DNA from: Macrostomum lignano
Taxonomy: Eukaryota
Length of the DNA stretch: 64,000 nucleotides
Assembly: GCA_002269645.1 (NCBI GenBank)
Contig: NIVC01000201.1
Location: 186,001-250,000, forward strand
Reading direction: 5' to 3'
Positions 36,914 to 41,357 of this stretch are shown here, piece after piece. The notes under the pieces are model-generated. The model saw only the letters and a list, made by a program, of their open reading frames with translations, was not told where the DNA came from and searched no databases. Made by a program: the position numbers and the translations under genes. Within the stretch, counting starts at the first letter, position 1, and every line of letters begins with the position of its first letter.

Positions 36914-39900
36914 TCAAAGTTCCTCTTGTAGCCACTTTCTTTTCCTGCTCTTCCGCTCAACCTGCTGCTTCTTGAGCACATCCTGCTGGCTAGGGGATCC
37001 AGAGCCTGCCAGTCTCTTCAGTAGAAGATTTCTCTGCCAGCGACAGGCAGAGTAGGTGGCGGCCGCTCGAAGCTCCTGCTCGTCTGCGTCTTCGCGGTCG
37101 GCCACGTCTCGAATCCAGTCCTGGCCGCTGGAGTCCCTGTCTGCCAGCAGCTCAAACCGCAGAGCCCAAAGCAGGGCGTCAAAGTTAATGTAATAGTACA
37201 CAGCGTAATTGTCCAGGCGAACGGGAAAGATGTCGGTCAGATCTCCTTTCAGAAACCGAAATGCCGGTTGCTTTTCATAGTAAAAGCAGAACTTCCACGC
37301 GGAGTCCCGGCTTCGCAGATGCCGCCAGACGAACTCTACAGTGACCTCGGTAGAAGACTTTTCAGCGGGCCATGAAATGCCCCTGCACACCTGGTGCACG
37401 TGGCCACTACTGCGAAGCACAGTTGTCTCAGCAGCTTCTCGGTCACCGAACTTTACGCAGGCTAAAGTTCTCAAGGCATCCCGTGCTGAGCAGGCGCAGT
37501 CTGGCAGCCGAGCAATCAGCTTTATTAAAGAATCTTGAGATTGAATGCTACAGCTAGGGAGAGAGAGTTTTGCCACACATTCCCTCACCACATCGTAGAT
37601 CTCATAGTACTCGATGATGTCTGAATTCGGCAACGCAGCCTCTCTCATATCCGGTAGGATTTGGAACGGGTGAAAGAAAAAAATTCCCGAGTCACTCACG
37701 GGCCTCAGAGCACGGCTGAACTGCTGCAACAGCTGAGGCAGCTGATCAATCACCGTTTCCAGTGTGTTTGCGATGTCGCCTAGTGTCTGGTACATACTGC
37801 CGTCTCTCTGAACTGCGCCTTTGAGGTACAGGGCGGCATCCTTGAGGAAGAAATGCTCCATGATCCGGCCATGAATATTTTCTGGAGCTCGACTATTCTG
37901 GACGCTGTCAAGCAGCATCTGCAGCGATCTCCTCGTCAGATGCACAAGATTCTCTGGCTTCCACTGGTCGACCGGCGTCTCCTCCAGCATTCGGAAAGTG
38001 ATAGTCTTTACGTGGTACGGCTTCAAACCTTGTATGTTAAATGCATCACTGTGACATATAACCTTTTTTACTAGATACTTCAGCGTGACAAACAGCTGTC
38101 CTTGCAGGGTGGTGAGACATCGCTGCATTCTCTTCTCTAGAAAGTTAGTGCTAACACGGAGTTCTTGACCTCCTCGACCTGGAGATGCTGCATGCACAGC
38201 ATGGCAGGGGGATGAGGCGGAGTTGATGTCATTTTGAAGCGCCTGCAGTATTGACAAGGGAATGTTGGAATTGGAGACTCTGTCCGTCTGGAGTGGCGCA
38301 ATGGGCGGGTACCGGCAGACCCGGCCAGCCGTCACATCGTCAATTGCTGGTCTCAGAGTGGCTCCGGAATACGCATAAGCTGGGTTGGAAGCTGGAATGG
38401 ATTTGCGAAAGACAATTGTGAGTCAATTATTACATGGAATCTGTATTAACAATAATATTATCTAGATTCAAGAGGTATACCGAAAAAGTTGATTACTTGA
38501 TCTGATTGATCTGAGCAAACACGAACGCAAGGCGGAGGACCAGACTAAATATGAAAACGAGCAGGCACCCACACGCGCACCCCGCCCCCGCAACACACGC
38601 ACCCCGCACGCACCAGCCCCAGCCAAGCGAGCCACCTCACCCCGCAGTTTAAACGCCCTTACCACCAACACAGTGGCAAGGGTAACAAGAAACTCTTACC
38701 GAAGCCGGAACACACAATGTGGCCGTTACTGTACTCATGAAGCAATGTTCCTTCTTCCACGCACTCACAGATGCCCTTCAGGTGGTACATGCGGCCCTGA
38801 GTCAAACTTAGCACGTCAATATCGGACGCGATGTCAGTTCGACCGTCGAGTGTCTTCAGACTGTTGCCCCAGCCTTCGGAGAAGCTGCCGACTACAAACT
38901 GGTCTTCATCGTCAAGCCTCTTTCTTAAGATTTCTTGCAAAACATCGGCTGCAGCACTCTGCAGTGCAGCTCTCGAGTTTACGAATCCTGCCTGAGAGAG
39001 TGCCAGGTGCAGTTGCCGGCTTAGCTCTGTTTCGTCTGGAGGTGTTCTAAAATATGTAAATCAGTGTTCATAATCATTTTATTTAGGGGCCTAAAATTCT
39101 AAATTTCTACTAAAGTATTTTTGAAACTGTTTTTTTTTATCAAGTCGCAGTAAAACGTAACAGTTTCAAAAGTTTTAGGAATTGAGTTGAAAAGCTTTTA
39201 TTAAAGAAAATATTGCAATATCTCACGAGCAATCAGACTCAGAATCCGTCTCTAGGCTGGGAACAGTTTCGTCCTCTTCTTCGCTCAAACTTAAGTCGAA
39301 TAGCATGTCCATGGAATCTGCAGCCTTTGGCGCGTTGGTTGCAGTTTCTATTTGCCACTTTCCATTGGATTGTCGCAGATGGACGTCGGCTAACGCGCTG
39401 ACTAGTAATTTCGCGACTTGAATGCGCCCGGTGTGGAATGCAATGTCGAGAGGCGACATTCCATCGCTTCTTTGAAGATTGACATCGGCTTGGGCTTTGA
39501 TGAGTGAGTCTACGATAGGCAGATGACCGTTCTGTGATGCAATGTATAGAGAGGGGAGCACCCATCGAATTCGCGAAGGTTCACGTCCGCTTGTGCTTTG
39601 ATGAGCGAGTCAACGATCGTCTGGCAACCGTTTTTTGACGCAATATAGAGAGGTGATGAGCCTTGTACTTTTTCTTGGAGATTAACGTCAGCTCCTGCTT
39701 TAATGAGGATGTCCACTATTTGCGGGTGACCACTCTGTGAGGCTGTGTAGAGTGGTGTGACTCCTGTGTGTCTTTGGAGATCTACATTGGCCTGCGCTTT
39801 AATCAGTGAGGCCACCACTTCTTGATGGCCATTCTGAGAGGCAATGTCGAGAGGCGTAGAGCCAGCATATCCTGAAGCATTGACGTCTGCATGCGCTTTT

Positions 39901-41357
39901 ATGAGCATGTTTACCACATTGAGGTGCCCAGCCTCCGAGGCGATTTTGATGGGTGTCTCTCCGAGGTTCTTTGAACGATTTACATCAGCCTGTGCTCTGA
40001 TGAGCGCCTTCACTACCGTCAAGTGACCTTCTTGAGACGATATGTGGAGAGATGTGGAGCCATTTCTTGTTTGTAGATTGACGTCAGCCTGCGCTTTTAT
40101 AAGGGCATCAACCACTTGAATGTGTCCATTCTGAGATGCAACGTAAAGAGGTGACTCGCCCATGCTTTTTTGGAGATTGACTCTCGCTTGTGCTTTGATA
40201 AGCAGGGCAACAACTTGGAGATGGTTGTTTTGCGATGCAATGTAGAGAGGCGAAGATCCAGTGTTCCTTTGAAGATTGACGTCGGCTTGAGCTTTGATAA
40301 GCAGGTCAACAATTTGACGATGACCATTCTGCGATGCAATGTAGAGAGGTGAGCATCCATCAACCTCTTGAAGATTAACATCAGCTTGGGATTTAATGAG
40401 CAATTCGACTATTCTATAATGACAGTTTTGCGATGAAATAAAGATAGGTGACATCCCATCCGCTTTTGAAACATCGACATTGGCATTCGCTTGAATAAGC
40501 CAGTCTACAATTCGAAAATGACCATTTTGTGACGCGATATACAGGGGTGAGCATCCTTCAATCTCTTGGAGATTGACGTTGGCTTTTGCGTTGATGAGCA
40601 ACTCCACGACTTTCCGATGACCATTCTCAGATGCAATGTAAAGTGGAGTCATTTTGTCCATTTCCTGAATGTCAACGTTGGCTTGCGCTTCAACTAGTGC
40701 GTGCACGACTTCGGGGTGATCGTTGTGCGCTGCGATATAGAGCGGTGAGCAGTCTTCAGTGTCTTGAATATCCACATCGGCTTGAGCTTTAATAAGTGAG
40801 TTCACAACTTTAAGATGACCATTCTGTGATGCAATGTAGAGAGGTGAGGTGAAATGAACAGTCTCTTGAAGATCTACATCGGCATGAGCTTTGATGAGTA
40901 GGTCAACAACTTTATTGTGACCATTCTGTGATGCAATGTAGATCGGAGTGCATCCTTCGAACTCTTGAAGGTTGACATCGGCTTGAGCCTTAATAAGTAG
41001 ATCAACAACGTGTTGGTGCCCGTTTTGCGACGCGATGTAAAGAAGCGACTCGCCGGTTTTTGTTTCTAGGTTAATGTCAATTTTGGCTGCCAAGAATATC
41101 TCTAGCACATTTCGCCTGCCCAGTCTGCAGGCCAGGTGAGGTGGGGATAACAATTTGTCGTCCATCGGAACTAATATACCCACCAATGCTGGCCTGCGCT
41201 GTAGGTACCTGTAGGTAAGATCTGCGTCGTCATCCGTCACCGCCTCAATGACAGCTTGATCACTCACCTCGGAGTCTAAGCCTTCCTTATCAGATAGTTC
41301 AAAGGCCTGCATCAGAAAAGTTGCAATAGTTTGCAAAATTCTCCAAACAGAGCTCAT
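36914..41357 (-). CDS. Ankyrin-repeat / Mab-21 (cGAS-like receptor, cGLR) nucleotidyltransferase fusion, 3 exons, about 1317 aa, one 2-bp insertion
   Basis: Exons 41357-39227, 39046-38700 and 38391-36914. Donor tc|GTGAGA with acceptor ttttAG|a is phase 2; donor g|GTAAGA with acceptor ttccAG|ct is phase 1. 18 ANK repeats, then an NTase core VVGSFSEG...SDIDV...IDDVTA, then Mab-21 motifs ELRVSTNFLEK, LFVTLKYLVK and LKPYHVKTITF. An extra TA at 39545-39548 shifts the frame in ANK repeat 17. Confidence 0.87.

What the first reader, a model, noticed from the sequence alone, without database searches (positions are those of the whole stretch)
36914..41357. Ankyrin-array fused to a cGAS-like (Mab-21/cGLR) nucleotidyltransferase: a candidate modular innate-immune sensor
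Seen in sequence: three separate track ORFs splice into one gene with phase-matched GT-AG introns (39226-39047 and 38699-38392). The product has 18 near-identical ANK repeats, an acidic linker (SEEEDETVPSLETDSESDCS), then an NTase with GSFSEG, DID and a third acidic residue in IDDV, followed by Mab-21 helices. Established: cGAS and invertebrate cGLRs use G[S]...[D/E]xD...D to make cyclic dinucleotides that activate STING. Inference: an N-terminal ANK solenoid could give this enzyme a protein-ligand or autoinhibitory sensor in place of direct nucleic-acid sensing, analogous to repeat-based receptors. I cannot confirm how widely this architecture has been described.
Basis: partly seen in the sequence, partly recalled or inferred. 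Interest (0 to 1): 0.9.

Follow-up and report, generated by a model that had tools for sequence, protein, structure and literature searches.

The report
Flatworm ankyrin–cGAS-like enzyme gene, frameshifted

Summary
On the minus strand, three exons (41357-39227, 39046-38700, 38391-36914) join through two phase-matched GT-AG introns. Both intron positions are conserved in annotated Macrostomum lignano paralogs, down to 35% identity. The product has 18 ankyrin repeats, an acidic linker, a Mab21/cGAS-fold nucleotidyltransferase and a 250-residue C-terminal helical domain with no known fold. G53/S54, D75, D77 and D133 are invariant, or nearly so, across the family.

Three corrections apply:
- Exon 1 has a 2-base insertion near 39544-39545. 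The ORF from the ATG therefore stops at 39510, before the enzyme. A ~97% identical UniProt copy (A0A1I8FSD0) reads in frame there, so this is either a copy-specific lesion or an assembly error.
- The repeats are not near-identical; mean pairwise identity is 51%.
- The architecture is not new. Li et al. 2023 list ankyrin-cGLR fusions, including M. lignano proteins, and cloned five M. lignano cGLR domains for their screen.

The enzyme core is mildly acidic (pI 6.3), which argues against nucleic-acid sensing. Function, ligand and downstream receptor remain untested. Verdict: a new member of a known kind, of moderate interest.

The parts
39227..41357 (-). Exon 1: start codon at 41357-41355, N-terminal hydrophobic helix, ANK array and acidic linker. 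It contains the frameshift.
   Evidence: ORF list and translation. The N-terminal motif is shared with paralogs P0042 and P0046.
39361..41150 (-). 18 ankyrin repeats of 33-34 aa, consensus xSPLYIASQNGHxxVVDLLIKAQADVNLQxxxG.
   Evidence: Pfam Ank_2 E 3.8e-135 and Ank E 1.2e-122. Repeat register and 51% mean identity. Variable positions lie at the hairpin tips and after GH.
39544..39545 (-). 2-base insertion (AC in CTCTATACATTGCA) that shifts the reading frame inside repeat 17.
   Evidence: Three-frame translation, and a clean 1317-aa product after removing the two bases. The near-identical copy P0047 reads in frame here.
39510..39512 (-). Premature stop codon reached by the ATG frame because of the frameshift.
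   Evidence: The 615-aa ORF ends here.
39227..39291 (-). Acidic linker SLSEEEDETVPSLETDSESDC(S).
   Evidence: Translation.
39047..39226 (-). Intron 1 (GT...AG, 180 nt, phase 2).
   Evidence: Sequence. An intron lies at the same place in the paralog loci L001 and L002. UniProt model P0047 uses the same junction.
38700..39046 (-). Exon 2: N-lobe of the NTase, with G53-S54 (38889-38884), D75 (38823-38821) and D77 (38817-38815).
   Evidence: Translation. These residues are invariant in alignments A2 and A3.
38392..38699 (-). Intron 2 (GT...AG, 308 nt, phase 1).
   Evidence: Sequence. In L001 the intron has the same position and phase; in L002 it has the same position in the protein.
36914..38391 (-). 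Exon 3: rest of the NTase core (third acidic residue D133 at 38341-38339), Mab-21_C-like helices, C-terminal family-specific domain and the stop codon at 36916-36914.
   Evidence: 473-aa ORF. D133 is conserved in 11 of 12 sequences in A2 and 15 of 15 in A3.
37886..38083 (-). Mab-21_C (HhH/H2TH-like) region, CT residues 219-284.
   Evidence: Pfam PF20266 E 1e-3, 19.6 bits. The family profile hits mouse cGAS at E 1.5e-6 over this region.
36998..37702 (-). Family-specific C-terminal helical domain with a small beta sheet, CT residues about 346-580.
   Evidence: Conserved in the family (alignment A4). AF2 pLDDT 77.5. No PDB fold match, best Foldseek E 1.2.
36935..36952 (-). C-terminal basic cluster KSRKRK (looks like a nuclear localisation signal; inference only).
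   Evidence: Translation. Similar basic tails occur in paralogs P0007 and P0040.

Best explanation
The locus is one copy of a large Macrostomum lignano-specific family of ankyrin-cGLR genes.

Shown:
- The gene has three exons.
- The encoded protein, once the 2-base insertion is removed, is 1317 aa. It comprises an N-terminal hydrophobic helix, 18 ANK repeats, an acidic linker, a bilobed Mab21/cGAS-fold nucleotidyltransferase with the GS loop and the acidic triad D75/D77/D133, and a roughly 250-aa helical C-terminal domain of unknown fold.

Inferred:
- Intact family members are ligand-gated nucleotide-second-messenger synthases.
- The ANK solenoid and/or the C-terminal domain bind a ligand that is not a nucleic acid, or hold the enzyme in an off state.
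- Ligand binding orders the GS activation loop. The triad then coordinates two Mg2+ ions to condense NTPs into a cyclic or linear oligonucleotide, which is read by a still unidentified receptor.

In the window as given, a 2-base insertion in ANK repeat 17 stops translation before the enzyme. This copy is therefore either a very recent pseudogene or allele, or it carries an assembly indel.
For: Gene structure:
- GT-AG introns with matching phase.
- Introns at the same two places in the annotated paralogs P0003 (locus L001, phase also checked) and the 35%-identical P0026 (locus L002).

Fold and homology:
- AF2 model with pLDDT 87.5 and pTM 0.88.
- Foldseek PDB hits: cGAS 7uux at E 1.6e-6 and Cv-cGLR1 8gjw at E 1.7e-6, then MAB21L1, MB21D2, MiD51 and bacterial CD-NTases.
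- The family profile hits only cGAS and cGLR1 in the PDB.
- hhalign against PF03281/PF20266-positive relatives (one named, from a bivalve) gives 99.9% probability and E 9e-36, aligning GS with GS, SDIDV with SDxD, and AIDDVxAxRC with SDVAYAFRC.

Catalytic residues:
- G53, S54, D75 and D77 are invariant and D133 is 11/12 in A2. All five are invariant in the broader alignment A3.
- The D77-to-D133 spacing is 55 residues, within the [DE]h[DE]h-X50-90-h[DE]h rule quoted in Li et al..

Family size and species:
- 87 clusters (at 50% identity) match at E<1e-30, and every close member looked up is from M. lignano.

Ligand type:
- The NTase core has pI 6.3, against >8.5 reported for nucleic-acid-sensing cGLRs.

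Immune or cell-death context:
- Some paralogs carry a C-terminal caspase domain.

Selection until recently:
- About 2.1 kb downstream of the frameshift stays open in the shifted frame.
Against: - The reading frame is broken in this copy, and no RNA or read data were available to show whether that is real or whether the gene is expressed.
- On the single sequence, Pfam Mab-21_C is below its cutoff and PF03281 does not hit.
- The N-lobe profile alone finds nothing in the PDB. Register with the cGAS catalytic residues therefore rests on fold similarity and on the hhalign bridge, not on a residue-level superposition.
- Li et al. cloned five M. lignano cGLR domains, but none is named among their 15 active enzymes. 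No activity has been shown for this clade.
- Planarians lack cGAS and STING (PMC13563047). Whether M. lignano has STING was not determined.
Confidence: 0.6

Rival explanations
1. This copy is a pseudogene. The 2-base insertion is real, so only a 615-aa ANK-only protein (or nothing) is made and the NTase exons are no longer translated.
For: - The frameshift and premature stop are in the sequence as given.
- No plausible GT-AG intron rescues the frame. Candidate donors lack consensus, and the skipped DNA would encode a perfect repeat.
- The family is very large and duplicated, which favours turnover.
- The adjacent ANK gene also has a single-site frame break near 36010.
Against: - It is the only lesion in about 3.95 kb of coding sequence.
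- The ~97% identical copy A0A1I8FSD0 reads in frame at this site but is disrupted at other sites where the window is intact. That pattern fits random assembly indels.
- Two neighbouring genes each showing one isolated indel also fits assembly error.
Confidence: 0.35
2. The Mab21 domain is a non-enzymatic scaffold or nucleotide-binding module, as in MAB21L1 or MiD49/51, and the protein acts as an ANK adaptor rather than a second-messenger synthase.
For: - MAB21L1 and MiD51 are also significant fold matches.
- No activity is reported for M. lignano cGLR domains in the 2023 screen's main text.
- Some paralogs, such as P0097, have lost the acidic residues.
Against: GS, D75, D77 and D133 are invariant or nearly so across paralogs down to about 32% identity. 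That conservation is not expected if catalysis were dispensable. According to Li et al., Mab21L1/2/3 lack a predicted functional active site.
Confidence: 0.12
3. It is a nucleic-acid sensor like cGAS or Drosophila cGLR1, and the ANK array only modulates localisation.
For: - cGAS is the best fold and profile match.
- The protein has a C-terminal basic KSRKRK cluster.
Against: - The NTase core has pI 6.3 and the whole protein pI 5.6, against >8.5 for dsDNA- and dsRNA-sensing cGLRs in Li et al..
- The 2023 screen used a nucleic-acid PAMP pool, and no M. lignano enzyme is named among the 15 active enzymes studied in depth.
Confidence: 0.08
4. The ANK ORF and the NTase ORFs are two separate neighbouring genes that only look spliceable.
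For: In this window the ANK frame ends before the NTase exons.
Against: - After the frameshift the ANK repeats continue seamlessly in the frame that splices into exon 2.
- Many annotated M. lignano proteins have ANK and Mab-21_C in one chain.
- The intron between the linker and the NTase is conserved in L001 and L002.
- UniProt A0A1I8FSD0 uses the same junction.
Confidence: 0.04

Closest known systems
ANK-cGLR fusion proteins catalogued by Li et al. 2023 (Cell; bioRxiv 10.1101/2023.02.22.529553), including M. lignano PAA67649.1 and PAA58690.1 and the Stylophora pistillata ANK-cGLRs
   Same: Both have ankyrin repeats joined to a cGLR nucleotidyltransferase core. The M. lignano entries are from the same species as the closest relatives of this gene. 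Constructs #89-93 of that screen show the same GS[FY]xxxWG...SD[IV]D motif, and #89 is a near-identical paralog of P0026.
   Different: This locus is a different paralog, at most 63% identical to the annotated NCBI proteins retrieved, and it is frameshifted. None of these fusions has a known ligand or product.
UniProt A0A1I8FSD0 (M. lignano, ANK_REP_REGION domain-containing protein; P0047)
   Same: It is 95-98% identical to the window product over the aligned segments, has the same linker-to-NTase splice junction, and its gene model starts in the equivalent of the ORF upstream of this gene.
   Different: It is in frame at the window's frameshift site. Its model has out-of-frame or skipped stretches elsewhere in the ANK array, skips part of the N-lobe and lacks about 110 aa of the C-terminal domain. 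It is a different copy or assembly.
Vertebrate cGAS (e.g. PDB 7uux, 4k8v)
   Same: Both have the bilobed Mab21 NTase fold, the GS loop, the acidic triad and the Mab-21_C helices (SYHxKT and HxFxP-type motifs).
   Different: Sequence identity is only 12-15%. This protein has a 10-residue insertion between GS and DxD, an acidic rather than basic core, an N-terminal ANK array in place of the disordered basic N-terminus, and an extra 250-aa C-terminal domain. A cGAS-type zinc thumb was not identified.
Invertebrate cGLRs with solved structures (Crassostrea virginica Cv-cGLR1, PDB 8gjw/8gjy)
   Same: The fold match is as good as for cGAS (E 1.7e-6), and the family profile hits 8gjy at E 5.5e-5.
   Different: Cv-cGLR1 responds to dsDNA (Li et al.), and most cGLRs are single-domain enzymes. 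This protein is multidomain and non-basic.
Non-catalytic Mab21 proteins (MAB21L1 PDB 5eom, MiD51 PDB 4nxu)
   Same: Same fold; they are significant Foldseek hits.
   Different: Those proteins lack a predicted functional active site (Li et al., for Mab21L1/2/3). This family keeps GS and all three acidic residues.

Membership tests
cGAS-like receptors (cGLR; Mab21-fold CD-NTases of animals) | Bilobed Mab21/cGAS nucleotidyltransferase fold | tested here: met
   AF2 model with pLDDT 87.5 and pTM 0.88. The top Foldseek PDB matches are cGAS, Cv-cGLR1, MAB21L1 and MB21D2, with E 1.6e-6 to 1e-4 and TM-score normalised to the target of 0.5-0.59.
cGAS-like receptors (cGLR) | Sequence homology to the Pfam Mab-21 (PF03281) and Mab-21_C (PF20266) families | tested here: met
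   The single sequence is inconclusive: PF20266 scores 19.6 bits against a cutoff of 24.1, and PF03281 does not hit. At profile level the test is met. The PDB search hits only cGAS (E 1.5e-6) and cGLR1. hhalign gives 99.9% probability and E 9e-36 over 277 columns against relatives that pass the PF03281 and PF20266 cutoffs. Several paralogs carry a precomputed PF20266 hit.
cGAS-like receptors (cGLR) | Active-site motif: G[S/G] loop plus [DE]h[DE]h-X50-90-h[DE]h | tested here: met
   The motifs are G53-S54, D75-I-D77-V, a 55-residue spacer, then I-D133. These residues are invariant in A3 and invariant or 11/12 in A2. They are aligned to the same motifs of canonical Mab-21 proteins. In the model they lie on beta1/helix, beta2 and a later strand.
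cGAS-like receptors (cGLR) | Synthesis of a nucleotide second messenger, dependent on the acidic triad | not testable with these tools
   This needs enzyme assays. The five M. lignano cGLR domains in the 2023 screen are not named among the 15 active enzymes.
cGAS-like receptors (cGLR) | A cognate receptor (STING or other) for the product in the same genome | not tested
   No suitable query or tool was available. Planarians lack STING (PMC13563047), and M. lignano is not in Table S5 of Li et al..
cGAS proper and nucleic-acid-sensing cGLRs | Basic ligand-binding surface (pI above about 8.5) | tested here: not met
   The NTase core has pI 6.30, the C-terminal region 6.99 and the whole protein 5.57. 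The criterion is from Li et al..
Ankyrin-repeat proteins | Tandem 33-residue ANK repeats recognised by Pfam | tested here: met
   Ank_2 E 3.8e-135 and Ank E 1.2e-122 with 17 stretches; 18 repeats by register.
Non-catalytic Mab21 proteins (MAB21L1/2, MiD49/51) | Loss of the catalytic acidic residues | tested here: not met
   All three acidic residues and the GS loop are retained and conserved. The protein is therefore not filed here.
Intact protein-coding gene | Uninterrupted reading frame from ATG to stop across the spliced exons | tested here: not met
   The exons sum to 3956 nt (remainder 2 on division by 3). There is a frameshift at about 39544-39545 and a stop at 39512-39510. Whether this is biological or an assembly error cannot be decided here.

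The most novel reading that the evidence does not exclude
M. lignano has built a lineage-specific repertoire of ANK-cGLR sensors: at least 87 sequence clusters at 50% identity. These sensors have an acidic enzyme core and a private C-terminal domain. On this reading they detect protein or other non-nucleic-acid ligands and signal in a phylum where cGAS and STING are otherwise reported lost. Some members are joined directly to a caspase effector (PAA59752.1, PAA80948.1). That would make the family a STING-independent cGLR immune or cell-death network, with this locus as one of its members.
Probability: 0.2. Interest if true: 0.75.

Novelty: new member of a known kind. Interest (0 to 1): 0.35.

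Why it matters
cGLRs with repeat domains attached are the least understood part of the cGAS-like receptor family. No ligand, product or receptor is known for any ANK-cGLR. Most flatworms are reported to have lost cGLR signalling altogether, yet M. lignano is a transgenic, RNAi-tractable model. An expanded ANK-cGLR family there offers a practical system to ask three questions: how a repeat solenoid gates a CD-NTase, what non-nucleic-acid ligands such enzymes sense, and what reads their product if STING is absent. This locus adds little beyond the 2023 catalogue, and as given it may not encode a full-length protein.

Tried and rejected
- Pfam on the single NTase sequence gave only a sub-threshold Mab-21_C hit.
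- The first PDB profile search (alignment A1) was swamped by ankyrin hits and was useless. It was redone with trimmed alignments.
- An N-lobe-only profile (A3) against the PDB gave no significant hit; the best were E about 1.3 and unrelated. Direct sequence register with the cGAS catalytic residues was therefore not obtained, and an hhalign bridge through Mab-21-positive relatives (one named, from a bivalve) was used instead.
- The C-terminal domain gave no fold match in the PDB, with best Foldseek E 1.2 and only weak TPR-like noise. It also showed no homology to the TPR tails of those relatives (hhalign E 0.39).
- Rescuing the frameshift with a cryptic intron was rejected. 117 GT-AG pairs are formally possible, but none has a convincing donor or acceptor, and all would delete well-formed repeat sequence.
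- An exact look-up of the window's Cys-loop channel ORF, tried to identify the source record, found nothing on record.
- Literature searches for Macrostomum with cGLR or STING, and for cGLR-ANK-caspase fusions, found nothing in main texts.
- A STING search in M. lignano was considered and dropped. The word-indexed protein search would return vertebrate STINGs, and a negative result would mean nothing.
- tblastn found no second Mab21 copy in the window.
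Full report
**What is in the sequence.** The minus strand between 36914 and 41357 carries four long ORFs: 39510-41357 (615 aa), 39223-39561 (112 aa), 38659-38940 (93 aa) and 36914-38335 (473 aa).
- Intron 1 is 39226-39047. The donor is gctc|gtgaga and the acceptor ttttag|aacacc, and the split codon tc|a encodes Ser.
- Intron 2 is 38699-38392. The donor is ttcg|gtaaga and the acceptor ttccag|cttcc, and the split codon g|ct encodes Ala.

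Their lengths (2131 + 347 + 1478 = 3956 nt) leave a remainder of 2, and the frame that starts at the ATG stops at 39512-39510. The cause is two extra bases inside ANK repeat 17, where the sequence reads CTCTAT[AC]ATTGCA (about 39544-39545) and other repeats read CTCTATATTGC. Upstream the protein reads ...REFDGCSPLY, and downstream the array continues seamlessly in another frame as (LY)IASQNGHLPIVDSLIKAQ.... Deleting AC gives one 1317-codon ORF with no other stop.

**Domains.** Pfam finds a very strong ankyrin signal in the first 710 residues (Ank_2 E 3.8e-135, Ank E 1.2e-122, 17 stretches). By register there are 18 repeats. They share a strong consensus but are not near-identical: mean pairwise identity is 51%, range 15-85%. 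Variation is concentrated at the hairpin tip (repeat positions 30-32 and 1) and just after the GH dipeptide.

The 607 residues encoded by exons 2-3 are numbered here as "CT", starting at TPPDE. On their own they give only a sub-threshold Mab-21_C hit (E 1e-3, 19.6 bits against a cutoff of 24.1) and no hit to the Mab-21 NTase model.

**Is it a cGAS-like enzyme?** Five lines of evidence say yes.
1. A profile of 12 family members (alignment A2) searched against all PDB sequences hits only cGAS (best E 1.5e-6) and cGAS-like receptor 1 (8gjy, E 5.5e-5), through the Mab-21_C helices.
2. An AlphaFold2 model of the 607 residues is confident (pLDDT 87.5, pTM 0.88). Its best PDB fold matches are cGAS (7uux, E 1.6e-6) and oyster Cv-cGLR1 (8gjw, E 1.7e-6), followed by MAB21L1, MB21D2, MiD51 and then bacterial CD-NTases.
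3. The profile also finds more distant relatives. The one looked up that carries a name is from the bivalve Sinanodonta woodiana, and four of the five scanned pass Pfam's cutoffs for both PF03281 and PF20266.
4. A profile-profile alignment to those relatives gives 99.9% probability and E 9e-36 over 277 columns. It places GS on GS, SDIDV on SDxD (with a 10-residue insertion, WGNSLKTLDG, in the flatworm family) and AIDDVTAGRVCRYP on SDVAYAFRICSWP.
5. G53, S54, D75 and D77 are invariant and D133 is present in 11 of 12 sequences in A2. All five are invariant in a broader 15-sequence alignment, with members 34-61% identical to this protein.

The third acidic residue is the first D of IDDV; the second D varies between paralogs. 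The D77-D133 spacing of 55 residues fits the [DE]h[DE]h-X50-90-h[DE]h rule used to define cGLR active sites (Li et al.). In the model these residues sit where a Pol-beta-type NTase needs them: GS follows strand 49-52, DxD lies on strand 75-89, and D133 lies on strand 131-140.

One caveat remains. An N-lobe-only profile finds nothing in the PDB, and I could not obtain a residue-level superposition on cGAS.

**Is the fusion real?** The evidence favours one gene.
- Many annotated M. lignano proteins combine ANK repeats and Mab-21_C in one chain.
- In the genomic locus of P0003 (890 aa; GCA_002269645.1), introns interrupt the gene at the same two places and in the same phase...ELLSG|intron|SALVEYRLSQRL and ...PGY-G|intron|CC-SSPA.
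- The 35%-identical paralog P0026 has introns at the same two places in the protein: before SINVSPSDDKHLSHQLH and between HSGV and PSNV.
- The UniProt model A0A1I8FSD0 uses the same linker-to-NTase junction.

**Species and family.** All 38 word-index hits are M. lignano proteins, 31-67% identical over the aligned stretches. The exhaustive profile search finds 87 clusters (at 50% identity) with E<1e-30 and 1244 with E<1e-3. Every close member whose name I looked up is from M. lignano.

One of them, A0A1I8FSD0 (P0047), matches the window at 95-98% identity in every aligned segment, and its gene model begins in the counterpart of the ORF upstream of this gene. The window therefore comes from M. 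lignano or something very close to it, and P0047 is another copy, allele or assembly of the same gene.

P0047 reads ...REFDGCSPLYIASQNGHLPIV... straight through the window's frameshift site. It has out-of-frame or skipped stretches at other places where the window is intact. That reciprocal pattern fits random indels in long-read assemblies. So does the observation that the neighbouring plus-strand ANK gene has one isolated frame break near 36010. A real, very recent inactivating mutation cannot be excluded. No cryptic intron plausibly rescues the frame.

**The rest of the protein.** CT residues about 346-580 form a conserved, mostly helical domain with a small sheet (alignment A4; AF2 pLDDT 77.5). 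It has no significant PDB fold match (best E 1.2) and no detectable homology to the TPR tails of the more distant relatives. It appears specific to this family. The protein ends in a basic KSRKRK cluster and begins with a short hydrophobic helix that paralogs share. I draw no conclusion from either.

**What is already known.** Li et al. 2023 (bioRxiv 10.1101/2023.02.22.529553 / PMC9980059; published in Cell) surveyed about 3,000 cGLRs.
- They report that 87% are single-domain, and that some are fused to TPR or ankyrin repeats (Fig. 1C, S2A).
- Their Table S2 lists M. lignano PAA accessions with Ank_2 domains.
- Their Table S3 shows five M. lignano cGLR domains (#89-93) cloned without the ANK region. 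#89 is a near-identical paralog of P0026.
- No M. lignano enzyme is named among their 15 active cGLRs studied in depth.
- A 2026 study found neither cGAS nor STING in the planarian Schmidtea (PMC13563047).
- I found no main-text literature on Macrostomum cGLRs.

**How it most likely works.** What is shown is the architecture, the fold and the conserved catalytic residues. The rest is inference:
- Intact family members are ligand-regulated nucleotide-second-messenger synthases.
- The enzyme core is mildly acidic (pI 6.3; whole protein 5.6), whereas dsDNA- and dsRNA-sensing cGLRs have pI above 8.5 (Li et al.). Direct nucleic-acid sensing is therefore unlikely.
- The ANK solenoid and/or the private C-terminal domain are the obvious candidates for ligand binding or autoinhibition.
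- The lineage-specific expansion, and the existence of paralogs with a C-terminal caspase domain (PAA59752.1, PAA80948.1, PAA93319.1; Peptidase_C14 E about 1e-25 to 1e-27 for the two scanned), point to an immune or cell-death role.
- The product and its receptor are unknown.

**Rival readings.** Confidences are my estimates.
- This copy is a pseudogene: 0.35.
- The domain is a non-catalytic Mab21 scaffold: 0.12. The invariant triad argues against it.
- It is a nucleic-acid sensor: 0.08. The pI argues against it.
- It is two separate genes: 0.04. The conserved introns and the fused paralogs argue against it.

**Verdict.** However, the ORF is broken in this copy, "near-identical repeats" is overstated, and the architecture, including in this species, is already in the literature. 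I rate it a new member of a known kind, with interest 0.35. The most novel reading the evidence does not exclude is a STING-independent, protein-sensing cGLR network in M. lignano, with some members joined directly to caspases. It concerns the family rather than this locus. I give it probability about 0.2.

Noticed in passing
window 31256-36432 (+): The adjacent convergent gene is a giant ANK-only ORF of 1615 aa. It continues as ANK repeats in another frame (36001-36432). The frame switches near 36010-36016, where GGTTGCC is one T short of GGTTTGCC. This is a second isolated frame break in a neighbouring gene, which bears on the choice between assembly error and pseudogene.
   Followed up: partly
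proteins P0079 (PAA59752.1), P0179 (PAA80948.1), P0097 (PAA93319.1), M. lignano: Paralogs of this family carry a C-terminal caspase domain. For the two scanned with Pfam (P0079, P0097) the order is cGLR, ANK, caspase, with Peptidase_C14 E 2.7e-25 and 2.8e-27; P0179 is in the same 90% cluster and is named a caspase p20 domain protein by UniProt. P0097 has lost the acidic residues (NDIN; RPQQT). I found no description of cGLR-caspase fusions in the searchable literature.
   Followed up: partly
protein P0039 (UniProt A0A1I8GXZ3), M. lignano: This gene model has two complete cGLR domains in tandem with a short ANK segment between them. It could be a real tandem-cGLR protein of the kind Li et al. 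mention, or two fused gene models.
   Followed up: no
window about 38721-38784 (CT residues 88-109): H88, C93, C95 (at least 90% conserved), G108 and H109 are conserved across the family. They lie in the stretch between the DxD strand and the next strand. This could be a metal-binding site, at a different position from the cGAS zinc thumb. It was not checked in model coordinates.
   Followed up: no
window 36998-37702 (-): The roughly 250-aa C-terminal domain is conserved in the family but has no PDB fold match (best E 1.2) and no homology to the TPR tails of the more distant Mab-21 relatives.
   Followed up: yes
window 23248-24636 (+): A single-exon 462-aa ORF encodes a Cys-loop ligand-gated ion channel (Neur_chan_LBD E 4e-24, Neur_chan_memb E 4e-23). 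An exact look-up found no record of this product.
   Followed up: partly
window 27354-29393 (+): A 679-aa ORF has an LRAT (lecithin retinol acyltransferase / NlpC-P60-like) domain hit (E 2.7e-7).
   Followed up: no
window 42235-43152 (-): A 305-aa ORF just upstream of the gene contains low-complexity tandem motifs (ATLHPIHHT, HSSHSYFAS). The UniProt model A0A1I8FSD0 starts in its counterpart, probably an over-extended gene model.
   Followed up: no
window 48000-56000: There is a strong positive GC skew at 48-52 kb (0.31-0.58), followed by an AT-rich block (GC 0.30-0.32) at 52-56 kb. The long ORFs there (e.g. 49366-51189) have no Pfam hit.
   Followed up: no
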